IMG/VR virus record: IMGVR_UViG_3300032242_000723
Span: 62,001 to 126,000 of that record
Length of the DNA stretch: 64,000 bases
Reading direction: 5' to 3' (one strand)
The notes under the pieces were generated by a model. The model was not told where the DNA came from and searched no databases. It saw only the letters and a list, made by a program, of their open reading frames with translations. Positions 6,861 to 61,342 of this stretch are shown one piece after another. A program made the translations under genes and the position numbers. Position 1 is the stretch's first letter; each line of letters opens with the position of its first letter.

Positions 6861-7844
6861 ATGACAATACAAACCTGGTTTACTGGATATAATAACTTCC
6901 AAAAACTTACCCTATTATCAGGTCAAGGGGAAAATCAGTTTATTACGGAAATGGTTGATGTAGAGACACAGCCTTTTCAGACTATACAAGAAACGTTTGC
7001 TGCTCATCTTACTGGTGCTACTCATCCAGTAGAAGTATTATACAGCGGTGGTATGGACAGTGAATTCGTACTTAAAGTATGCCTGCAAAACAAAACACCT
7101 GTCACTGCAATTACAATGAGATTGATGTTTCGGGGAAGCCCTATTAACGTTCAGGATCTGTATTATGCTGAAAAGTTTTGCAGAGAAAATAGTGTTTCTC
7201 ATAAGATAGTAGATTTAGATTATGAACCATTCTTTAAGAACGGTGACTATGCTAAATATTTGGATCCTTATCTATTAACATTCTATTCAACTGCTACTCA
7301 ATTATGGTTATTAACACAATGCGATCATTTTCCTATAATAGGCGGAGGGTATACGTGGCCTCAAATTAACATCGGTAAAAAGATATTCAGTCCAATTCGC
7401 AACGAAGCTGCATTCTTTGATGTGTTTATGCGAGATAATGGCATTACAGGCATAGGTAACATGCTTGGACATAGTTTAGAATCAAATATTATGCTAGCAA
7501 AAGAACATGTAAAGGTGTATCTTAATGACCCTGAAAATGTACTAGGAGACGAGTTGAAGATAAGAGTTTTGAAACAACGAATGTGGGAGAATTTAGGAAT
7601 AGGGAATCTTGAGTTTAGACATAGATTTAATGGCTGGGAGATGTACCCGCGACTTAATGACTGGTACAACATAATGGATCCAGTTGAAGCATCGTTAAAG
7701 CGAAACAACTTAACTATCAGTACCATTAAATGGGGCCAAAAATTAGCAGATGCAATAGGGGGTGATTCTGGTGAAAACTCAGATTTTGGCGCAGGTGATG
7801 CAGAGCTATTAGCAAAGGTCAGGCAGATAATTAATTCCCAATAA
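6861..7844 (+). CDS. PP-loop (adenine nucleotide alpha-hydrolase-like) protein
   Basis: VLYSGGMDSE near N-terminus; TAAATA motif upstream. Confidence 0.6.
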   Translation: MTIQTWFTGYNNFQKLTLLSGQGENQFITEMVDVETQPFQTIQETFAAHLTGATHPVEVLYSGGMDSEFVLKVCLQNKTPVTAITMRLMFRGSPINVQDLYYAEKFCRENSVSHKIVDLDYEPFFKNGDYAKYLDPYLLTFYSTATQLWLLTQCDHFPIIGGGYTWPQINIGKKIFSPIRNEAAFFDVFMRDNGITGIGNMLGHSLESNIMLAKEHVKVYLNDPENVLGDELKIRVLKQRMWENLGIGNLEFRHRFNGWEMYPRLNDWYNIMDPVEASLKRNNLTISTIKWGQKLADAIGGDSGENSDFGAGDAELLAKVRQIINSQ

Positions 7845-8487: not shown

Positions 8488-8692
8488 GCCAATGGGCAAG
8501 GTCGGTGATGGCGATATTCCTAATCCTGAAAAGACCACTGAAAGTAAGTACCCTACTGCATTGTTCTGGAATCGTTGCGGTTTGGCTGTGATCATTCTAT
8601 TCACATTAGTCGGTATCGGAACCTGTCGTGCCCTCGTCGGTGTGCCTGTTGTTGAATACGACTCCCCTGCCGTTATCGGCGACAAAACATAA
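8480..8692 (+). CDS. small membrane protein
   Basis: One hydrophobic stretch GLAVIILFTLVGIG. Confidence 0.5.
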   Translation: MGRPMGKVGDGDIPNPEKTTESKYPTALFWNRCGLAVIILFTLVGIGTCRALVGVPVVEYDSPAVIGDKT

Positions 8693-8707
8693 TATAGGAA
8701 AATAGCA

Positions 8708-8920
8708 ATGCCTTCTGAAACACCACGTATGCCATACGAAACACACGAACGCCTTCTCAGTCAAGGTGGTAACGGACATCTTCCCTTGCTATCAGGTGAA
8801 GTTGCTTGGATGCACCGAAGCAAGATGGCTCGTACTCGCGATGCCCGCATCTTCCTGTCCGGTACCATTGTTGGTGTTGTCGCACTGGTCGCTAGCCTAG
8901 CGTTTATGATGAACCAATGA
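8708..8920 (+). CDS. small protein with C-terminal transmembrane helix
   Basis: IFLSGTIVGVVALVASLAFMM; AGGA RBS. Confidence 0.55.
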   Translation: MPSETPRMPYETHERLLSQGGNGHLPLLSGEVAWMHRSKMARTRDARIFLSGTIVGVVALVASLAFMMNQ

Positions 8921-17180: not shown

Positions 17181-18350
17181 ATGAACTACTGTTCCTTCTG
17201 CGGAAGCCATAAAGATAAAGTCCGCAAGTTGATTGTGGGTGATGATACTGCGATTTGTAGTGATTGCATTACCTTATGCAACCAACTGATAGAAGAGCGA
17301 GTTCAACAAAGTGTACAAGGTGAGTTTGACGCATATAGTATCAAAGCACATTTGGATGAGCATGTGATTGGTCAAGATTCTGCTAAAGAGGTGATCAGTG
17401 TTGCGATATCAAATCACTATAAACGAATCAACTATCCACCCAAGCATATTGAGATCCAAAAGGGCAATGTGTTATTGATTGGGCCAACTGGTTCTGGTAA
17501 GACATTGCTTGCTCGTGCTGTAGCGAAATATCTAAACGTTCCCTTTGTAGTGGCAGATGCTACTAGCCTGACTGAATCAGGATATGTAGGTGAGGATGTT
17601 GAATCAATGATCTCTACCTTACTATCACTTGCTGACAACGATGTTAGCTTGGCCGAGCGTGGTATCGTGTTCATTGACGAGATTGACAAGATTGCTCGTA
17701 AGAGTGAGAGTGCAAGTCTAACTCGTGATGTAAGCGGCGAAGGTGTGCAACAAGCATTATTGAAACTGGTAGAAGGTACCACTTGCCGCGTAAGTCCTGC
17801 TGGAGTTCGCAAAGGCCCAAACAGTGAGACCGTTGAAGTTAGCACCAAGAACATACTCTTCATAGCAGGTGGAGCCTTTGTTGGCCTTGAAAATATCATA
17901 AAGAGTAGAGTAGGCGGAGCGTCTATAGGATTCAATGCACCGTTGAAGTCTAAGACAAAAACTATTGACTATTCTAATATCGCACCCGGTGATCTTACTA
18001 AGTTTGGAATGATTCCTGAACTGGTTGGTAGATTTACTACGACTATCACATTAGAAGAACTGTCATTAGATCAGTTAGTCTTGGTATTGACTACTGTAAA
18101 AAACAGTTTCATTGAACAATACAAGTACATGTTTGAGATTGATGGTATTCGATTGGTATTTACCGATGAGGCCATTGTAAGAATCGCGCAGAAATGTCTT
18201 GATCTAAAAACAGGTGCTCGTGGATTACATACCGAGATAGAGAAGGTATTAATGCCTCACATGTTCCACATTCACAAGTACTCAAAGAACAAGATAGGCA
18301 AGATCACTATCACTCTTGATCTAGTTGATAATCCAAAATCTTTAGTATAA
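17181..18350 (+). CDS. clpX: ClpX AAA+ unfoldase
   Basis: C4 zinc finger CSFC..ICSDC, Walker A GPTGSGKT, GYVGED pore loop, FIDEIDK, RDVSGEGVQQALLK, IGF loop, TGARGL. Confidence 0.95.
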   Translation: MNYCSFCGSHKDKVRKLIVGDDTAICSDCITLCNQLIEERVQQSVQGEFDAYSIKAHLDEHVIGQDSAKEVISVAISNHYKRINYPPKHIEIQKGNVLLIGPTGSGKTLLARAVAKYLNVPFVVADATSLTESGYVGEDVESMISTLLSLADNDVSLAERGIVFIDEIDKIARKSESASLTRDVSGEGVQQALLKLVEGTTCRVSPAGVRKGPNSETVEVSTKNILFIAGGAFVGLENIIKSRVGGASIGFNAPLKSKTKTIDYSNIAPGDLTKFGMIPELVGRFTTTITLEELSLDQLVLVLTTVKNSFIEQYKYMFEIDGIRLVFTDEAIVRIAQKCLDLKTGARGLHTEIEKVLMPHMFHIHKYSKNKIGKITITLDLVDNPKSLV

Positions 18351-18399
18351 CACCCAAAATACTTTAGTTTTTTACGCAATAGTGTATACTAAATAATGT

Positions 18400-18447
18400 T
18401 GTAGATGCTTAACGGGTCTACAGTAAAAAGTCTTGCTTAAAAGGAGA
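18400..18447 (+). promoter_or_regulatory. Hsp20 5' leader with ROSE-like RNA thermometer
   Basis: TGTAGA/TCTACA hairpin then TCTT(G)CT-TAAA-AGGAGA pairing the SD with a bulged G in UUGCU. Confidence 0.55.
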
Positions 18448-18454
18448 TAAAAAC

Positions 18455-18913
18455 ATGACTAATACACAACTACACCTTCGTGCCCTTGACATTCCGTCAA
18501 TCCATAGATTTGCAGTAGGATTCGATTCAATGATCGATGAACTTATGCGAACTAATGCAGAACAACCAAACACTAACTATCCCCCATATAACGTAATCAA
18601 GCACACAGACGACATGTTCACGATTGAACTGGCTGTGGCTGGCTTTGATGAACAAGACATCAAGATCACCGTTGATAAGAATGTTCTCTTAATCAAAGGT
18701 GAACAGCGTCAGGATGTTGGTGAACTGGATCAAGAAGTTGAATACCTACATCGCGGGATTTCAGCACGAAACTTCACACGTTCGTTTAAACTAGCGGACT
18801 ATGTGGAAGTAGTAAACGCTACTGCTAGTAACGGTATCCTCAAGGTCGAACTTGAGAGACAAGTTCCTGAAGCGGCTAAGCCAAAAACTATTCGCATATC
18901 AAGTAATAAGTGA
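18455..18913 (+). CDS. ibpA: small heat shock protein Hsp20 (IbpA-like)
   Basis: [39 protein letters not shown]...NGILKVEL. Confidence 0.95.
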
Positions 18914-19501
18914 TTTACACTTACTAAAGTGAAAGCGTATCATTCCGGGTTTTCCACCTGATTTGAGGCAGTGAGGGCATGTTATTATAATCTTACTAGG
19001 ATTAATCTGTGATTGGAAATTATGAGTACCATTCGCAAATTGTGCCTTTGCTGCCTCTGATTGCGTCATCGGCGGTTTTCGGTCAGTAATCTTTGTGATC
19101 TTCTTCCGAAACTCTGGTGATTGATTTTTTCTGCGATTTGCCTCTGCTATCTTGGTAGAATCTCGTTTAGGTTTACGCATTTTAGCCTTGTGTTCTTCGC
19201 TCAAAGGTCCATATTTAGGATTCTTTTTGGTATGTTTTGAGGCACCATCTCCGCCGTCTGTTTTGTTGATTAGGATTCCTGTACCAAGGTCTTTTCTTCC
19301 GTACCAACGAATCATTCTACGTTCAATCGCAAGGGCACCGGTATTAGTTAGATTACATTCTAAGAATACGATTTTGGATCTATCTTTAGGAACAGAAACG
19401 CCAGGATGCCTAGCATATGCTCTGTTGTCTTTGCCTTTTCCGATATAATAGGGAGTGTTGTCACTTTTGCGTAGGTACGCATATACGTAATAAATAGTCA
19501 T
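18899..19501 (-). CDS. GIY-YIG-type endonuclease with NUMOD3-like linker and Zn finger
   Basis: YYVY-x-[20 protein letters not shown]; [22 protein letters not shown]. Confidence 0.8.
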
Positions 19502-19569
19502 TGCTGATGCTCCTTCAAAGCGTTAGAGTAGTTGGGTGTTAGCGCACCGTGAACTACATCTTTATTTAG
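19502..19569 (-). promoter_or_regulatory. conserved endonuclease leader copy 3
   Basis: CTAAATAAAGATGTAGTTCACGGTGCGCTAACACCCAACTACTCTAACGCTTTGAAGGAGCATCAGCAATG. Confidence 0.8.
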
Positions 19570-19670
19570 TCCAAAACACTTGCTATTCATAACAATAAAT
19601 AGTATAGTAAATCAATAACCCGTGCTTGCAGTCAATAATGGCTGCAATCACACTAACAAGGATCAATAAC

Positions 19671-19979
19671 ATGGCAAACGCCGAAACAAAAAGCAAGATC
19701 AAGCCTAACCTCGCACTTCGCGAACCTCCTCTTTGGAAGATCATCTATTTCAATGATGAGAAGACCACGATGGAATTCGTTGTTGAATCTTTGGTTGAGT
19801 TCTTTAACTACAACGTGGATACTGCATCAGCCATTACAGTTGATATCCATGAAAACGGCAGTGCGGTAGTCGCAGTATTACCGCATGAGATTGCAGAACA
19901 AAAAGGCGTTGAAGTCACGCTGGATGCACGATCAAAGGGTTATCCCTTGAAGGTCATGGTCGAAGCGGAATCAAACTGA
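19671..19979 (+). CDS. clpS: ClpS N-end-rule adaptor
   Basis: EPPLWKIIYFNDEKTTMEFVV, IHENGSAVV, E.K..EV...AR..GYPL. Confidence 0.9.
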   Translation: MANAETKSKIKPNLALREPPLWKIIYFNDEKTTMEFVVESLVEFFNYNVDTASAITVDIHENGSAVVAVLPHEIAEQKGVEVTLDARSKGYPLKVMVEAESN

Positions 19980-20669
19980 TAAAGTGATACGCTTAGCGTA
20001 GTATGGATTCTTTTTCAAATATGGATTATTGACATAGTTGGTGTTGTTAATCACAACATCAGCACTCTTGTCGTAGGTACCAAATACCCAATGCGTTACT
20101 TTATGTTCGGTATCACTTGACAGTGTATCGCGTAGAGGTATTTGGTCTTCTACGATATCAGGCTTTTCCCCAAAGTATAAATCAGGATGAGGAACTGCAC
20201 CTGTAACAACGATCATCTTCTTGATGTCTAGGTGCTTTTGTAGTTTCCCAATCGCGTTATATAGATAGGCTACATCCTCGTGCCTTGCGGATGCAGGAAG
20301 AAGATTGTCTAATGTGAGAGAATCTCCTACGTTACTCCAACCATTGATACCTACAACAGCGATGCCGTCAATAATGACTACATGTTGATGTAGCATACAT
20401 ACGTTCGGGATAGCCTTAGTAATGGCTATTAACTCTGTTGTACGCTTGCTAATACTTTCTGCTGTTTCATATTCTAAGACACCAGGTACATAGAATACAC
20501 CTTGGTAAAATCTACCTAAGTGTGAAAGTGTTTGCACCACTGTTCGCAAACTTGAACTGATATTGCCTGCTACCAAACAATATAAACTCGTTGCTTTTCC
20601 TTCCCAGTTGAAACTATCATCGGGAGCGAGGTGCAAATCACTTATCAGGTCAAAACCGATATCTTGCAT
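19971..20669 (-). CDS. metallophosphoesterase-fold protein with degenerate metal ligands
   Basis: ISDLHL retained, but AGN for GD and PGVLE for GNHE. Confidence 0.65.
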   Translation of the reverse strand: MQDIGFDLISDLHLAPDDSFNWEGKATSLYCLVAGNISSSLRTVVQTLSHLGRFYQGVFYVPGVLEYETAESISKRTTELIAITKAIPNVCMLHQHVVIIDGIAVVGINGWSNVGDSLTLDNLLPASARHEDVAYLYNAIGKLQKHLDIKKMIVVTGAVPHPDLYFGEKPDIVEDQIPLRDTLSSDTEHKVTHWVFGTYDKSADVVINNTNYVNNPYLKKNPYYAKRITLSV

Positions 20670-23252: not shown

Positions 23253-25628
23253 ATGAAGTTAAAATATTTACTCGCAGCTACTACTGCTGCACTGTGTCTG
23301 TCTTTCGGGACTGCACATGCAGTTGAGGTTGCTGATGATCCATCAGTGATCGTTATTACCGCAACCAAGCGAGAAACTAATCTAAAGGATACCCCAATCT
23401 CAGTCGTTGTTCAAAACGCACAGAGCCTTCAGGATCGTCACGTTCAAAGTCTAGTTGACTTTGCTGATGGTGCGGTCCCATCGCTTCGCGTTGCAACTTT
23501 TGAGTCACGTCAATCAGCATTGACTATCGGCATTCGTGGTATTGTTCCTTTTGATGCAAATCAAACGGCACGAGATCAGGGCGTTGGTGTTTATCTTGAT
23601 GGCGTCTATCTTGGTCGTCAACAAGGTCTGAATGCAGCATTGTTTGATGTTGATCGTATTGAAGTCCTTCGTGGTCCTCAGGGAACACTCTTCGGTCGTA
23701 ATACTGAAGGTGGTGCATTGTCAATCATCACTAAGCAACCAACTGGTGAGTTCGGTGGCAGTTTGACAGGTGGCATTGGCAACTACGGTAGCTATACTAC
23801 ACAGGCTCACATTGATCTTCCTTCAGTTGCAAACATCGCAGTTAAGGTTGATGGTGTTGTTCAACATCAAGATGCTACGGTGAAGAATATTCTTGCTGGT
23901 CAAACTGGCTGGAACTATCGTCACAATGTCGGTGGAAAGATCACTGCAAAGTGGGAACCTACTGACAACTTCTCGGCTACGGTATCATACGATAACGTAC
24001 ACGACAAGAACACGCCAAACTATAGCCAACTGATCAACTACAACCCAACGAATAAGACTGTTGGTAAGTATGATACAGTGACTAACAAGCTGGTTGCACC
24101 TACTGCACCTACTGGCACTTCAACTGTTTGTGCGACTTGTATTGCCCCTCTCTCACGCCTCGTGTATGTGAGTGGTACTGATCGTCAATCAGTTGCTGAA
24201 ATCGGCGTTCCACAACAGCCTAGCATTGGTGACTCAAATGGTTACTCTGCTAATCTGAAGTACACGGTTTCACCAACACTGGAACTTCGCTCTATCACTG
24301 CAAAGCGTAGGGTAACTACTGAACAGTGGGACAACTCGGGCGGCGCACATAGAACGATCTTTGCTCCTAATGCAAACTTCAGCCGGTACAGTCTGTCGCA
24401 TTTGTATCAAGATCAAGTCAGCCAAGAATTCCAAGCAGTAGGCGAATTGCCTAAGTTGGATTATGTTGTTGGTCTGTACTACTTCAAGGAACATGTTCAA
24501 GAATATGCGGCAACTGCATCCACTAATAAGTGGAACGCAACTGGTACTGCATATACGATCAACAGCCCATCGGTAGCAGGAGCAATCACTTCTTCTAACA
24601 ATGGTTGGAATCCTTACTCTTGGTTCTTTGCGCGAAACAGCCGAGCAACTTCTGAAAGCAAAGCCGCTTTCGCTCAAGCAACTTGGACACCAGTTGAAAA
24701 GGTTCACTTGACTGTTGGTGGTCGTTATACAGAAGACAAGCGTAATGGTGCGTTGACTGTTGTATCTGGTGTTGCTACTCCTTGGAAGTTGAAGTTTGAT
24801 AAGTCACGCTTTGATCCAATGGTAACGGTTGCGGTTGATGCTACTGATCATATCAATGCATATGCTAAGTATTCAACTGGCTATCGTGCTGGTGGTGCAA
24901 ATGATCGTTCTTCACGATTTAGTGCATTCGGTCCAGAATCTGTTACAGCGTATGAAATCGGTACTAAGGCAAATATGTTCGACAACACTGTCAATCTAAA
25001 TGTCGCAGGTTATATGATGGATCGCACTGGAACTCAGATTGACTTTGACCACGTTGATACTTCACCCTATCTTGCTGATGGCGTGACTAAGAACCCAACT
25101 TTCAATCTTCACACCGAAGATACTGCGAATGCTCCTGGCACTTCAAAGATTCGTGGTGCTGAAGTTGAATTGACTGTTCGTCCAACTAACCGACTATCGT
25201 TTGGTACGTCTTATGCGTATACATATACTAACATCCCTGCTACTCTGAACCCACAAACTGGTGCATTGACTAAGGTGTTCGTTGTGTACACTCCTAAGAA
25301 TGCGGCAGCAGCTTATGTTGACTATCGTATCCCACTCAAGAACGATGCTCGTGTAGAACTACACGCCGATGCTAACTACTCTGATGCAGTTTACAGTTTC
25401 CAGAATGAAAATGTACTGACACAGCCTAGCTTCATCGTCAACGGTCGGGTTGCTCTTGCTAACCTCTCTGTTGCTAATCAGAAGACTTCTGTCTCACTTT
25501 GGGGCAGAAATATTCTAGACGAGACGCATGTTTATCGTAGGTCTGATGCTAATATCACGACTCTCGGTTCTTATGCAAACTTCAATCCACCTCGCACTTT
25601 CGGTGTAGAAGTGAATACGAAGTTCTAA
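23253..25628 (+). CDS. TonB-dependent outer-membrane receptor
   Basis: Signal peptide, IVITATKRE TonB-box region, IRG, VYLDGV, IEVLRGPQGTLFGRN..GGA plug motifs, C-terminal PRTFGVEVNTKF. Confidence 0.93.
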   Translation: MKLKYLLAATTAALCLSFGTAHAVEVADDPSVIVITATKRETNLKDTPISVVVQNAQSLQDRHVQSLVDFADGAVPSLRVATFESRQSALTIGIRGIVPFDANQTARDQGVGVYLDGVYLGRQQGLNAALFDVDRIEVLRGPQGTLFGRNTEGGALSIITKQPTGEFGGSLTGGIGNYGSYTTQAHIDLPSVANIAVKVDGVVQHQDATVKNILAGQTGWNYRHNVGGKITAKWEPTDNFSATVSYDNVHDKNTPNYSQLINYNPTNKTVGKYDTVTNKLVAPTAPTGTSTVCATCIAPLSRLVYVSGTDRQSVAEIGVPQQPSIGDSNGYSANLKYTVSPTLELRSITAKRRVTTEQWDNSGGAHRTIFAPNANFSRYSLSHLYQDQVSQEFQAVGELPKLDYVVGLYYFKEHVQEYAATASTNKWNATGTAYTINSPSVAGAITSSNNGWNPYSWFFARNSRATSESKAAFAQATWTPVEKVHLTVGGRYTEDKRNGALTVVSGVATPWKLKFDKSRFDPMVTVAVDATDHINAYAKYSTGYRAGGANDRSSRFSAFGPESVTAYEIGTKANMFDNTVNLNVAGYMMDRTGTQIDFDHVDTSPYLADGVTKNPTFNLHTEDTANAPGTSKIRGAEVELTVRPTNRLSFGTSYAYTYTNIPATLNPQTGALTKVFVVYTPKNAAAAYVDYRIPLKNDARVELHADANYSDAVYSFQNENVLTQPSFIVNGRVALANLSVANQKTSVSLWGRNILDETHVYRRSDANITTLGSYANFNPPRTFGVEVNTKF

Positions 25629-27640: not shown

Positions 27641-28168
27641 ATGGAAAAAGTGTTACAACATCTACGCGAACGGCATCTTGATGTGGATCTTCACCGACCA
27701 GTCATTGATGAAGTTGAAGGTGTTGCAACACTTTTCCTATGGAATCTGTCAGGCGCACTTGTCGGCTATCAACAGTATCGTCCACACGCAAGTAAGGCTG
27801 TTAACAACGATGTTCGTTTGGGCCGTTACTTTACTCGTGTAAAGCAGCCCACAATCGCTGTGTGGGGCGTTGAGAGCTTGGACCTGACACCACATGTAGT
27901 ATTTGTCACAGAAGGCGTGTTTGACGCTGCACGACTAACATCGCGTGGCTACAGTGCTATCGCGGTGTTGTCAAATGATCCCAAGCGTGAACTGCGTAAC
28001 TGGTTGAAGTCATTGGCTCGCAAGGTTGTTGTCGTATGTGATAACGATAGTGCAGGTCGGCGTTTGGCTAAGTTTGGTGATGTTGTCGCATTCACTGAAG
28101 AAAAAGATTTAGGTGACAGTTCCGACGAGTTTGTGACTACCCTATTGGAAAAGTACGGAAGCGTTTAA
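27641..28168 (+). CDS. Toprim-domain (primase-like) protein
   Basis: VFVTEGVFDA, VVCDNDSAG, KDLGD. Confidence 0.85.
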   Translation: MEKVLQHLRERHLDVDLHRPVIDEVEGVATLFLWNLSGALVGYQQYRPHASKAVNNDVRLGRYFTRVKQPTIAVWGVESLDLTPHVVFVTEGVFDAARLTSRGYSAIAVLSNDPKRELRNWLKSLARKVVVVCDNDSAGRRLAKFGDVVAFTEEKDLGDSSDEFVTTLLEKYGSV

Positions 28169-59865: not shown

Positions 59866-60038
59866 GTGATATTTCCTTGTTCACAATTGATATCTTAACT
59901 TAGCAAACGGTTGAGCAAATGTCAACCTTTATTTAGGCACATTCCACTTCCTGTCCGCAGCTTTCGCTAATCCATGGGCGGAATACTTAGTGCTTTGCCC
60001 ATGGTCAATGTAACGGCAGGTCTCTACTAACCTAAAGT

Positions 60039-60113
60039 TGGAGCGGGCAGAGGGATTCGAACCCTCGACATTTACCTTGGCAAGGTAACGCTCTACCACT
60101 GAGCTATGCCCGC
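60039..60113 (-). tRNA. trnG-GCC: tRNA-Gly(GCC)
   Basis: GCGGGCA/TGCCCGC acceptor, TTACC-TTGCCAA-GGTAA anticodon arm, GGTTCGAATCC, encoded CCA. Confidence 0.95.
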
Positions 60114-60121
60114 ATTATTCT

Positions 60122-60196
60122 TGGAGCGGATGACAGGGGTCGAACCTGCGACGAACAGCTTGGAAGGCTGACACTCTACCACTGAGTTACATCCGC
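60122..60196 (-). tRNA. trnG-TCC: tRNA-Gly(TCC)
   Basis: GCGGATG/CATCCGC acceptor, CAGC-CTTCCAA-GCTG, GGTTCGACC, encoded CCA. Confidence 0.95.
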
Positions 60197-60203
60197 GTTA
60201 TAT

Positions 60204-60280
60204 TGGATGCGGGAGAGGGATTTGAACCCCCGATCTTTTGGTTATGAGCCAAACGAGCCACCGGACTGCTCCACCCCGCG
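60204..60280 (-). tRNA. trnM-CAT: tRNA-Met(CAT), initiator-like
   Basis: CGCGGGGTGGAGCAG start with C1:A72 mismatch, TTTGG-CTCATAA-CCAAA, GGTTCAAATCC, encoded CCA. Confidence 0.9.
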
Positions 60281-60285
60281 TTAAA

Positions 60286-60401
60286 CTATTTTGAAGAACA
60301 CACAAGATACTGAATAATGTTGACGCATTATTTTTCGCTACTCGTCAAAGTAACCGAGATCCGCGATTAGCAGAAATCGTCAGGTGTATTCATCAAAATA
60401 G
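60286..60401 (-). ncRNA. stem-closed ncRNA cassette A
   Basis: Ends CTATTTTGA-T-GAATACAC / GTGTGTTC-T-TCAAAATAG pair with one T.T mismatch. Confidence 0.6.
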
Positions 60402-60402
60402 T

Positions 60403-60473
60403 CTATTTAGAAGAACGTACCCCATGCGTACCTTTCGGTCGTTAGACTTATACGGATACATTCGTCAAAATAG
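60403..60473 (-). ncRNA. stem-closed ncRNA cassette B
   Basis: CTATTTTGA-C-GAATGTA / TACGTTC-T-TCTAAATAG; internal ACC-GAAA-GGT hairpin. Confidence 0.55.
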
Positions 60474-60494
60474 TCTACTATTATTTATACTTTT

Positions 60495-60623
60495 TAAACA
60501 GTTTAGAAGAATGCAGTGAAAGCGTCCTTTCGTGATACGACTGGATTCAAACCAGTATCTCGACCGTCGCCAGCCAGGGCGTTATCAGCCGCCACCATAT
60601 CCTGCATTCATCTAAACTGTTTA
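60495..60623 (-). ncRNA. stem-closed cassette C containing a degenerate tRNA-like core (60532-60602)
   Basis: AAACAGTTTAGA-T-GAATGCAG / CTGCATTC-T-TCTAAACTGTTT; D stem GGCG/CGCC and T arm ACTGG-TTTGAAT-CCAGT. Confidence 0.65.
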
Positions 60624-60626
60624 GGA

Positions 60627-60777
60627 TAACTTATTAGAAGAGTGCTGCCGAGGTATTGCGTTTCCCCTATTGCTCATCTGGCGCCAGATGGGAGAATTTC
60701 GGTTTATGATTGCCAACTACGACATACTTTCCCTACACCCAATTTTACGCTGACGACAGCACTCGTCTAATAAGTTA
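60627..60777 (-). ncRNA. stem-closed ncRNA cassette D
   Basis: TAACTTATTAGA-C-GAGTGCTG / CAGCACTC-T-TCTAATAAGTTA; internal palindrome CATCTGGCGCCAGATG. Confidence 0.6.
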
Positions 60778-60791
60778 AGTTTTATTCACGT

Positions 60792-60968
60792 TTAACTTAT
60801 TACGCTAACACTACAACATAGAGTTGGGACTTAAACCCAAACTTCCCACTATCGTCGCTGCACGTGACTACGAAAGACCAGCCTCGCTATTGTTGTTCGT
60901 TGTGCTACTTACACCACATCTACTTTATCGTTTCGAACCGATGTCGCAGTGTTAGCGAAATAAGTTAA
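60792..60968 (-). ncRNA. stem-closed cassette E with tRNA-like D and T arms around a long insert
   Basis: TTAACTTATT-T-CGCTAACACT / AGTGTTAGCG-T-AATAAGTTAA; GTGT-AAGTA-GCAC and TTGGG-TTTAAGT-CCCAA. Confidence 0.6.
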
Positions 60969-61009
60969 GTTTTCAAAGATCAAGGTGATTTCTCATCTCT
61001 TATTTTCTT

Positions 61010-61038
61010 AGTATATATAGTCCTTATACCAATGTCAA
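61010..61038 (-). promoter_or_regulatory. strong sigma70-type promoter for ncRNA/tRNA operon
   Basis: TTGACA-17-TATACT on minus strand, no ORF before cassette E. Confidence 0.8.
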
Positions 61039-61063
61039 GAACTAGTTTCAGTTTTTGTAACTT

Positions 61064-61342
61064 TTATTTACAGTTAGCCTTGTACCAATCATACAAAGCA
61101 CCGAATGACTCAATGCAACCTTCTGCCTTGAAGGGACCATTGAACCTAGAGCCATTAGGTGCAACCAAACAATATTGCTCCATATCAGGTTCATATCCGT
61201 TGAAGAACTGATGTACCGCACTCAAGCGATAGTTTTTCTTGTCTTCAGGGATACTAAACGCTGCTACGATATTACCAGACAGATCAGTCATCTCAATAAC
61301 GATATCGTTGGTAATAGTCATTTCACTGAACGCAGTAGACAT
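61064..61342 (-). CDS. hypothetical early protein
   Basis: Promoter TTGACA-17-TATAGT at 61374-61402 and GGAG RBS. Confidence 0.6.
   Translation of the reverse strand: MSTAFSEMTITNDIVIEMTDLSGNIVAAFSIPEDKKNYRLSAVHQFFNGYEPDMEQYCLVAPNGSRFNGPFKAEGCIESFGALYDWYKANCK

What the first reader, a model, noticed from the sequence alone, without database searches (positions are those of the whole stretch)
60286..60968. Five tandem non-coding cassettes each clamped by a ~20-bp stem with a central pyrimidine mismatch
Seen: between a near-consensus promoter (61010-61038) and three tRNAs lie five units (177, 151, 129, 71, 116 nt) whose ends pair over 17-21 bp with one Y.Y mismatch, in four of them within the same context GA-Y-GA[AG]/[CT]TC-T-TC. 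Interiors are mutually unrelated and ORF-free; a TATAAATA motif (about 60481-60489) lies between C and B; flanks are duplicated pairwise (TCAAAATAGTCTA for A/B, AAAACTTAACTTATT for D/E). Established: RNase III cuts roughly two-turn helices and releases rRNAs and T7 mRNAs from such stems. Inference: a polycistronic small-RNA factory in which a standard processing stem releases different cargo RNAs (tRNA mimics, sRNAs), expressed both early and late.
Basis: partly seen in the sequence, partly recalled or inferred. Interest (0 to 1): 0.8.

Follow-up and report, generated by a model that had tools for sequence, protein, structure and literature searches.

The report
Stem-clamped RNA cassettes in phage tRNA operon
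A giant phage places five small non-coding RNAs, each closed by the same kind of 22-28 bp helix with one conserved U.U-type pair, in front of three tRNA genes; the same helices recur throughout the tRNA gene clusters of related phages, most likely as cutting and protection signals for co-transcribed RNAs.

Summary
On the minus strand, a near-consensus promoter (61038-61010) is followed by five end-paired units (E, D, C, B, A; 60968-60282) and three tRNAs. A helix scan of all 64 kb finds long-range stems of this quality only here. The window comes from a 333-kb uncultured jumbo phage. Related IMG/VR phages carry the same clamps inside tRNA islands: 98 of 105 distinct clamps lie in islands, and their ends usually coincide with tRNA ends. 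In the window's subclade the stem sequence is nearly invariant. The central pair is U.U or C.U in 37 of 38 distinct arm pairs and never Watson-Crick. The cargo ranges from 17 to 118 nt and includes tRNA-like RNAs and, in some phages, real tRNAs. G.U and U.U excess on the tRNA strand points to selection on the RNA. My best reading is standardised processing and "punctuation" helices, probably cut by RNase III near the U.U pair; cleavage is untested. A Y-RNA/Ro60 reading is a real rival: relatives encode a Ro60-like protein beside their tRNA islands, and unit B carries GACGAAUG. But no Ro60 gene was found here, and this clamp type does not track Ro60 loci. The "late promoter" idea is unsupported. 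I rate this a new variant of known kinds, of moderate to high interest.

The parts
61010..61038 (-). Sigma-70-type promoter TTGACA-17-TATACT that drives the cassette/tRNA operon
   Evidence: 11 of 12 matches. It is homologous to the promoter upstream of the clamp cassette plus GOLLD RNA in relative L002 1939-1968.
60969..61009 (-). Transcript leader containing CUUUGAAA, which is conserved in relatives' leaders
   Evidence: compare the upstream sequences of the C/D-type cassettes in L002, L018, L041, L046, L071.
60792..60968 (-). Unit E, 177 nt: a 28-nt-arm clamp with a U.U pair. Its cargo belongs to a conserved structured RNA family with T-loop-like hairpins.
   Evidence: Orthologues are L022 8970-9136, L041 3360-3527 and L097 6323-6489, at 79% mean column identity, with compensatory changes in the clamp and in the T-like hairpin.
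60627..60777 (-). Unit D, 151 nt: a 24-nt-arm clamp with GA-C-GAG / CUC-U-UC (C.U pair). Cargo is unassigned.
   Evidence: (z = -4.9).
60495..60623 (-). Unit C, 129 nt: a 22-bp clamp with GA-U-GAA / UUC-U-UC (U.U pair). The cargo folds as a cloverleaf-like tRNA mimic with the T-arm hairpin CUGGUUUGAAUCCAG.
   Evidence: (z = -6.9).
60482..60489 (-). TATAAATA between units C and B. There is no evidence that it is a promoter.
   Evidence: 4 found, 4.4 expected. In relatives, one search shows a similar sequence as the flank between GOLLD and the A-type cassette.
60399..60477 (-). Unit B, about 79 nt: the weakest clamp (C.U plus A.A and U.U). Its 5' arm GACGAAUG matches the Y-RNA motif GNCGAAN0-1G. 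Its last 7 nt are shared with unit A.
   Evidence: (z = -1.1). The motif comes from PMC4201824.
60282..60405 (-). Unit A, 124 nt: clamp UAGACUAUUUUGA-U-GAAUACAC / GUGUGUUC-U-UCAAAAUAGUUUA, ending 1 nt before tRNA-Met. The cargo is not conserved.
   Evidence: z = -5.9. Orthologous clamps stand upstream of the tRNA-Met/Gly/Gly trio in more than 15 phage loci, with cargos of 17-118 nt.
60039..60280 (-). tRNA-Met(cat) 60280-60204, tRNA-Gly(tcc) 60196-60122 and tRNA-Gly(gcc) 60113-60039
59930..60036 (-). A sixth end-paired non-coding element 3' of the tRNAs, lying outside the finding's coordinates
   Evidence: It is conserved in L002 776-905 and L014 2751-2890.

Best explanation
The five units are passenger RNAs of a polycistronic non-coding RNA/tRNA operon of a jumbo phage. 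Each is bracketed by a standardised leader/trailer helix. I propose that this helix is a processing and protection module. First, a double-strand-specific endonuclease, most likely the host's RNase III, cuts the 22-28 bp helix near the conserved U.U (or C.U) pair. Second, the AU-rich basal half (10-23% GC) then falls apart, exposing the 3' end of the upstream RNA or tRNA and the 5' leader of the downstream tRNA to the ordinary trimming enzymes (3' exonucleases and RNase P). Third, the GC-richer apical half (44-61% GC) stays as a short terminal clamp that protects the released cargo RNA. What is shown: the anatomy, the conservation, selection at the RNA level, and the coincidence of clamp ends with tRNA ends. 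What is inferred: the nuclease, the position of the cut, and the stability of the products. The cargos differ in kind. E is a conserved structured RNA, C is a tRNA mimic, and the A and B cargos are evolutionarily disposable. For some cassettes, therefore, the helix itself is the functional part.
For: The clamps are the only helices of this quality in 64 kb. They lie in one promoter-to-tRNA unit. In related phages, 98 of 105 distinct clamps lie inside tRNA islands. In 56 of those 98, the 3' arm ends within 12 nt of the next tRNA's 5' end (mode +1). In 41, the 5' arm starts at -5 to +10 of the preceding tRNA's 3' end, often including its ACCA. With strand-symmetric detection, G.U outnumbers A.C 223 to 92 and U.U outnumbers A.A 45 to 3 on the tRNA-sense strand, so the helix is selected in the RNA. 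Base pairs covary at many stem positions; cognate arms pair better than non-cognate ones (6.4 versus 4.4 of 7 inner positions), and E-type clamps show compensatory changes. Helix length of 22-29 bp equals the roughly two turns that RNase III needs (established knowledge; PMC6212723). The non-canonical pair sits at a sharp boundary in composition and stability. In relatives, one clamp hairpin precedes and another follows GOLLD RNA, like punctuation marks. Where the clamp begins inside the upstream tRNA's CCA, only a cut within double-stranded RNA could free that 3' end (inference). A-type cargos shrink to 17-19 nt loops in L077, L085 and L039 while the stem stays unchanged.
Against: There are no cleavage data of any kind; the phage is known only from a metagenome, and its host and RNase III status are unknown. 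The stem is conserved in sequence, not only in pairing: flanking G-C and A-U pairs are invariant, the central pair is U.U in 34, C.U in 3, U.G in 1 and Watson-Crick in 0 of 38 arm pairs, and there is a G.U at bp 3. Generic RNase III recognition does not require this, which suggests a specific reader. I did not score the stems against the published E. coli RNase III base-pair preferences, which I could not read from the text. No RNase III gene was found in the window. Clamps around real tRNAs (L097, L113, L140) would leave acceptor-stem extensions whose removal this model does not explain.
Confidence: 0.45

Rival explanations
1. The clamps are Y-RNA-like ligands. The helix with its unpaired-like pyrimidine followed by GAA is the binding site of a Ro60/Rsr-type protein, encoded by the phage or the host. 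The five units would then be a family of Y RNAs with different effector loops, some of them tRNA-like, that gate or tether Ro60 and exonucleases such as PNPase during infection.
For: Bacterial Y RNAs share a 5'-proximal GNCGAAN0-1G motif in the stem formed by the RNA ends, come as several paralogues, mimic tRNA and are encoded beside Ro60, including in phages (PMC4201824). Thermus phage phiLo Ro60 binds two phage Y-like RNAs that were identified by a 5'-3' stem plus a CGAA motif (PMC12135203). Unit B reads GACGAAUG (an exact match), D reads GACGAGUG, and C reads GAUGAAUG. The pyrimidine is non-Watson-Crick, like the bulged C of animal Y RNAs. Related phages encode a DUF2828+DUF7788 protein directly downstream of tRNA islands that contain clamps; its AlphaFold model's top PDB matches are Ro60/TROVE structures (9kop, 9l5y_A, 2nvo; E 5e-8 to 2e-6). 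At least 568 IMG/VR contigs carry this gene. In L100, two GAUGA clamps lie about 3 kb upstream of the gene on the same strand. RtcB is present in relative L018.
Against: No TROVE or DUF2828 protein was found in the 64-kb window or in the 4.5 kb beyond it, and the window's contig never appeared among the Ro60-like hits. GAYGA-type clamps are absent from 189 Ro60-like loci (about 1.7 Mb) except one lineage. In relatives the motif is UGAA, not CGAA, in 34 of 38 cases. It lies in a continuous 22-bp helix, whereas the Rfam YrlA consensus places GCGAAUG at a 6-bp helix/internal-loop junction. The Rfam Y_RNA and YrlA models do not match any unit. These phages have separate and better YrlA-like candidates: permuted tRNA-like elements with a different 5' motif.
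Confidence: 0.2
2. There is no cut inside the helix. The cassettes are excised solely by the tRNA-processing machinery, with RNase P making their 3' ends and tRNA 3'-end processing making their 5' ends. The intact long helix would be a blunt, exonuclease-proof terminal clamp that makes the cargos long-lived stable RNAs, comparable to T4 rnaC and rnaD.
For: Clamp ends coincide with tRNA ends. T4 encodes two stable non-tRNA RNAs in its tRNA cluster, one of them tRNA-like. End-pairing is common in stable bacterial RNAs (established knowledge).
Against: In most proteobacterial hosts, 22-29 bp of near-perfect dsRNA would be an RNase III substrate (established knowledge). Many clamps begin inside the upstream tRNA's ACCA, so that tRNA could not mature without a cut in the duplex. 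Cargos as short as 17-19 nt are unlikely to be the point of a stability device. T4 rnaC and rnaD lack such clamps.
Confidence: 0.2
3. The inverted repeats act in DNA. They could be ends of small mobile or recombining cassettes (MITE- or attC-like), or homing or recombination sites that shuffle cargos between phages, with no role for the RNA helix.
For: Stems are shared pairwise between neighbouring cassettes (A/B, D/E, C/D core). Cargos turn over completely between phages, and tandem overlapping duplications occur (window B/A, L046, L077). HNH and GIY-YIG endonuclease genes lie in these islands.
Against: The strand asymmetry of tolerated non-canonical pairs is strong (G.U 223 versus A.C 92; U.U 45 versus A.A 3), which DNA palindromes would not show. 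There are no target-site duplications and no related interiors. The clamps are positioned precisely against tRNA ends and always lie on the tRNA strand.
Confidence: 0.07

Closest known systems
RNase III processing helices of bacterial rRNA operons (16S and 23S leader/trailer stems)
   Same: A long helix formed by sequences flanking an RNA in a polycistronic precursor. The helix is about two turns long or more. tRNAs are released from the same precursor.
   Different: The cargo is only 17-130 nt. The helices stand in tandem and abut tRNA ends. The stem sequence and a U.U pair are conserved. Cleavage is untested here.
RNase III sites of the phage T7 early transcript (R0.3-R1.3 type hairpins)
   Same: Hairpins used as punctuation between units of a phage polycistronic RNA.
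   Different: T7 sites are shorter helices split by an internal loop. They separate mRNAs and carry no cargo in the loop.
Phage T4 stable RNAs rnaC and rnaD (species 1 and 2) in the tRNA cluster
   Same: Non-tRNA RNAs of unknown function co-transcribed with phage tRNAs. rnaC has a T-arm and paired ends.
   Different: They have no 22-28 bp clamp, no U.U motif and no sequence similarity.
Y RNAs / YrlA with Ro60 (Rsr), including Thermus phage phiLo Yrl1 and Yrl2
   Same: An end-to-end stem with a non-Watson-Crick pyrimidine next to (C/U)GAA. Several paralogues with different loops. tRNA mimicry. A Ro60-like gene beside tRNA islands in related phages.
   Different: The helix here is continuous rather than stem-bulge-stem. 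The covariance models do not match. No Ro60 gene was found with these units. This clamp type does not co-occur with Ro60-like loci.
GOLLD RNA
   Same: It occupies the same slot (promoter, clamp cassette, GOLLD, A-type cassette, tRNA-Met/Gly/Gly) in relatives L002, L041, L049 and L039.
   Different: The window has no GOLLD match. Units E, D and C stand in its place.

Membership tests
RNase III double-strand processing helix | About 20 bp or more of nearly uninterrupted double-stranded RNA | tested here: met
   The helices are 22-28 bp with one to three non-canonical pairs.
RNase III double-strand processing helix | Lies within a multi-unit precursor and brackets or separates RNAs that must be released | tested here: met
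   There is a promoter upstream and tRNAs downstream, and clamp ends coincide with tRNA ends in relatives.
RNase III double-strand processing helix | Staggered cleavage of both strands leaving 2-nt 3' overhangs, dependent on RNase III | not testable with these tools
   Needs end mapping or an enzyme assay.
RNase III double-strand processing helix | Fit to the in vivo base-pair preferences around E. coli cleavage sites | not tested
   The preference table is in a figure and supplement of PMC6212723 that I could not read.
Y RNA / YrlA | A stem formed by the RNA ends that carries the Ro60 motif (GNCGAAN0-1G or CGAA, bulged or at a loop) | tested here: inconclusive
   Unit B matches exactly. D, C and A, and 34 of 38 related clamps, deviate (UGAA). 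The motif sits in a continuous helix.
Y RNA / YrlA | Encoded next to a Ro60/TROVE gene | tested here: not met
   None was found in the window or in the L001 flank. The rest of the 333-kb genome was not seen.
Y RNA / YrlA | Match to the Rfam Y_RNA or YrlA covariance models | tested here: not met
   There was no hit on any unit even at E <= 10.
Y RNA / YrlA | Binds Ro60 | not testable with these tools
   This is a biochemical property.
tRNA | A cloverleaf with an anticodon loop recognised by ARAGORN or Rfam RF00005 | tested here: not met
   Only the three downstream tRNAs are found. Unit C has a T-arm-like hairpin only.
GOLLD RNA | Match to Rfam RF02032 | tested here: not met
   There is no hit in the window, whereas relatives score 189-205 bits.
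T4-type stable RNAs of tRNA clusters | A non-tRNA RNA co-transcribed with phage tRNAs | tested here: met
   Met by position and strand. Accumulation as a stable RNA cannot be tested here.
DNA inverted-repeat elements (MITE, attC) | Repeat-bounded copies with related interiors or DNA-level symmetry | tested here: not met
   The interiors are unrelated, and non-canonical pairs are strand-asymmetric.

The most novel reading that the evidence does not exclude
The clamp would be the address label of a previously unrecognised, sequence-specific RNA-handling system of jumbo phages. A dedicated protein, possibly the Ro60-like protein or an unidentified nuclease, would read the invariant GA-U-GA / UC-U-UC helix with its U.U pair, together with the G.U pair one helical turn away. 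It would then excise, protect or assemble whatever RNA is inserted in the loop. tRNA islands would thereby become modular expression platforms for interchangeable non-coding RNA cargos, including tRNA mimics and caged tRNAs.
Probability: 0.2. Interest if true: 0.8.

Novelty: new variant of a known kind. Interest (0 to 1): 0.6.

Why it matters
Phage tRNA islands are usually read as lists of tRNA genes. Here, a conserved helix module recurs between the tRNAs in many uncultured large phages. It brackets tRNA mimics, a conserved structured RNA, GOLLD RNA and even real tRNAs. If the helices are processing signals, they explain how long mixed RNA operons are dissected. They would also give defined ends for a set of unknown phage RNAs that could then be studied. 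If they bind a specific protein, they define a new phage ribonucleoprotein. Either way the module could serve as a natural scaffold for releasing small RNAs from one transcript in bacteria.

Tried and rejected
- **Rfam, window:** a gathering-threshold scan of the whole window and a permissive scan (E <= 10) of 59900-61100 found only the three tRNAs.
- **ARAGORN:** it finds no tRNA in any cargo.
- **Cultured phages:** DNA similarity searches found no relatives beyond the tRNA genes, and the neighbouring 378-aa protein has no match there.
- **Pfam and PHROGs:** scans of all 104 ORFs of the window found no TROVE, DUF2828, RNase III or dsRNA-binding domain.
- **Ro60-like gene in this phage:** three IMG/VR scans with Ro60-like queries and a local tblastn/HMM search of the fetched loci did not recover the window's contig. 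Two scans find only close relatives and one shows the best 80 of at least 568, so the gene's absence from the unseen 270 kb is not shown.
- **GAYGA clamps at Ro60-like loci:** none were found in 189 loci apart from one lineage.
- **T4-type late promoter:** rejected, because TATAAATA is not enriched.
- **Box C/D and K-turn reading of UGAUGA:** rejected, because no CUGA partner or bulge is present (read from the sequence).
- **Peptide coding:** rejected, because the only ORFs are 31-43 aa, not conserved, and have start codons inside stems.
- **Reference bacterial genomes:** one scan found only a 1.2-kb mis-binned phage fragment and one chance hit in a coding region, so it gave no clue to the host.
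- **T4 rnaC and rnaD:** folded for comparison; they have no long clamp.

Full report
**1. What is in the sequence**

The tRNAs lie on the minus strand: Met 60280-60204, Gly 60196-60122 and Gly 60113-60039. I therefore read the region on that strand.

A promoter, TTGACA-17-TATACT, sits at 61038-61010 and matches 11 of 12 consensus positions. A 41-nt leader and five end-paired units follow:
- E: 60968-60792
- D: 60777-60627
- C: 60623-60495
- B: about 60477-60399
- A: 60405-60282

The arms are 28, 24, 22 and 22 nt for E, D, C and A. B is weaker and shares its last 7 nt with A. A ends 1 nt before tRNA-Met.

In A-D the non-canonical pair lies in GA-Y-GA(A/G) / (C/U)UC-U-UC. It is U.U in A and C, and C.U in B and D. 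E has a U.U pair in a different context.

My helix scorer finds only E, D, C and A in the entire 64 kb, and the four longest inverted repeats in the window are these. The region folds far better than shuffles do, with z = -7.4; units A, C and D give z = -5.9, -6.9 and -4.9.
- the stems are longer than stated;
- unit A is 124 nt;
- B and A overlap.

**2. Where the window comes from**

The window is bases 62001-126000 of IMGVR_UViG_3300032242_000723, a 333-kb uncultured jumbo-phage contig. Its genes include ClpP, ClpX, ClpS, IF-1, a TonB-dependent receptor, a DNA ligase and a superoxide dismutase. No cultured phage is close to it.

**3. The clamps are a family feature of phage tRNA islands**

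Loci fetched through neighbouring proteins and through stem patterns show large tRNA islands of up to about 30 tRNAs that carry the same helices.

Across all fetched island loci I counted 105 distinct clamps, of which 98 lie inside islands. In 56 of the 98, the 3' arm ends within 12 nt of the next tRNA's 5' end, most often 1 nt away. In 41, the 5' arm starts between -5 and +10 of the preceding tRNA's 3' end, often including its ACCA.

An orthologue of unit A stands in front of the same tRNA-Met/Gly/Gly trio in more than 15 loci. Its stem is almost invariant, while the cargo ranges from 17 to 118 nt and cannot be aligned.

Unit E belongs to a conserved structured family, with 79% column identity and compensatory changes in the clamp and in a T-loop-like hairpin.

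C/D-type cassettes in relatives often carry a T-arm directly before the 3' arm, and ARAGORN scores two of them as an 83-nt tRNA. Unit C folds as a cloverleaf-like mimic. Overall, 10 of 91 cargos have a T-arm-like hairpin, against about 2 expected. In L097, L113 and L140 the clamp is a 14-15 bp extension of the acceptor stem of a real tRNA-Gln or tRNA-His.

**4. The helix is selected in RNA, and its sequence is conserved**

With strand-symmetric detection, and counting on the tRNA-sense strand:
- G.U occurs 223 times and A.C 92 times;
- U.U occurs 45 times and A.A 3 times.

A DNA palindrome would show no such asymmetry.

In 35 distinct GAYGA-type arm pairs, many positions covary, and cognate arms pair better than non-cognate ones. 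The pairs flanking the centre are invariant. In a separate count that left the central pair unconstrained, 38 distinct arm pairs gave U.U 34, C.U 3, U.G 1 and Watson-Crick 0 at the centre. A G.U at bp 3 lies 11 bp, one helical turn, from the central pair.

The central pair marks a boundary in composition. The basal halves are 10-23% GC and the apical halves 44-61% GC.

**5. Context in relatives**

The homologous promoter in L002, L018, L041, L046, L049 and L071 drives this order of elements: a C/D-type clamp cassette, then GOLLD RNA (Rfam RF02032, 189-205 bits, with an embedded tRNA), then the A-type cassette, then the tRNAs. The window has no GOLLD match; units E, D and C occupy that slot. 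Clamp hairpins therefore flank GOLLD on both sides, like punctuation marks.

**6. The Y-RNA lead**

Three published points raise this lead:
- Bacterial Y RNAs carry GNCGAAN0-1G in the stem formed by their ends.
- They mimic tRNA and are encoded beside Ro60 (PMC4201824).
- A Thermus phage Ro60 binds two phage Y-like RNAs that were picked out by a stem plus CGAA (PMC12135203).

Unit B reads GACGAAUG.

A DUF2828+DUF7788 protein (phrog_850) lies just downstream of tRNA islands in 57 loci. At least 568 IMG/VR contigs carry it. Its AlphaFold model (pLDDT 71.8) has Ro60/TROVE structures as its top three PDB matches. L018 encodes RtcB.

Several findings count against the link for these particular clamps:
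- No such gene is in the window or in the 4.5 kb beyond it.
- The window's contig never appeared among the Ro60-like hits.
- GAYGA clamps are absent from 189 Ro60-like loci, apart from the L100 lineage.
- The motif is UGAA in most relatives.
- It sits in a continuous helix, unlike the YrlA consensus.
- Separate YrlA-like permuted tRNA mimics exist in these islands.

**7. Explanation**

I favour standardised processing and protection helices (0.45). In this model:
- RNase III, or a similar double-strand nuclease, cuts near the U.U pair.
- The weak basal half melts and frees the neighbouring tRNA ends for RNase P and exonucleases.
- The apical half remains as a clamp on the cargo.

The anatomy and the comparative data are shown. 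The cut itself is inferred. The rivals are a Ro60/Y-RNA-type protein-binding stem (0.2), uncut exonuclease-proof clamps on RNAs released by tRNA processing (0.2), and a role in DNA (0.07). The sequence-level invariance of the stem remains unexplained and keeps a specific, unidentified reader in play.

**8.

TATAAATA occurs at chance frequency, 4 times against 4.4 expected, so expression "both early and late" has no support. The cargos have no credible ORFs.

**9. Novelty**

I found no description of these clamps in the searched literature. They combine known ideas: rRNA-type processing stems, T7-type punctuation, T4 stable RNAs and Y-RNA-like stems. The result is a conserved modular element of jumbo-phage tRNA islands, which I rate as a new variant of a known kind.

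Noticed in passing
window 59930-60036 (minus strand): A sixth end-paired non-coding element lies directly 3' of tRNA-Gly(gcc). Its ends pair as UUUAGGU...GCCUAAA, and it has an internal 8-bp hairpin with a 17-nt loop. It is conserved in L002 776-905 and L014 2751-2890.
   Followed up: partly
L002 2516-2979; L008 3774-4237; L039 7545-8034; L041 9376-9838; L049 4512-4975: GOLLD RNA (Rfam RF02032, 189-205 bits), with an embedded tRNA, sits between a clamp cassette and the A-type cassette in relatives. The window lacks it at the homologous place.
   Followed up: partly
L008 7747-9165; L100 6050-7450 (minus); loci L101-L291: A DUF2828+DUF7788 protein (phrog_850 'RNA-binding protein') lies next to large tRNA islands and is present in at least 568 IMG/VR contigs. 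Its predicted structure matches Ro60/TROVE plus vWA structures best (9kop, 9l5y_A, 2nvo).
   Followed up: yes
L039 4717-4789 and 10450-10523; L100 about 8640-8850 and 7480-7610 (minus): These are permuted tRNA-like elements (T-arm, closed acceptor stem, D-arm) that score 37-44 bits against Rfam YrlA, below threshold. They share a 5' motif, YUWCAGCAWWA, and one small element lies directly upstream of the Ro60-like gene.
   Followed up: partly
L018 9492-10706 (minus): An RtcB RNA ligase gene (Pfam E = 1.9e-131) lies inside the tRNA island of a relative.
   Followed up: no
L097 226-328; L113 1419-1518; L140 3439-3537: Real tRNAs (Gln, His, His) are enclosed in clamps that extend the acceptor stem by 14-15 bp. 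How such tRNAs mature is unclear.
   Followed up: partly
window 60768-60778 / 60792-60802 and 60282-60298 / 60461-60477: Because neighbouring cassettes share stem sequences, alternative pairings are possible: E 3' arm with D 5' arm, and B 5' arm with A 3' arm, the latter giving a 196-nt super-clamp.
   Followed up: no
window 17181-20669, 23253-25628 and elsewhere: The phage encodes ClpX, ClpP and ClpS homologues, a TonB-dependent receptor with a plug domain, IF-1, Fe/Mn superoxide dismutase, Hsp20 and dCMP deaminase. This is an unusually cell-like gene set.
   Followed up: no
window 27641-27663 / 27718-27740: This is the only other sizeable inverted repeat in the window (23-nt arms, 83% complementary). 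It overlaps the start of the ORF at 27641-28168.
   Followed up: no
L292 (JALQUO010000005.1, 1195 nt): A contig binned as a Rickettsiales MAG carries the A-type clamp and the tRNA-Met/Gly/Gly trio. It is probably a mis-binned phage fragment.
   Followed up: partly
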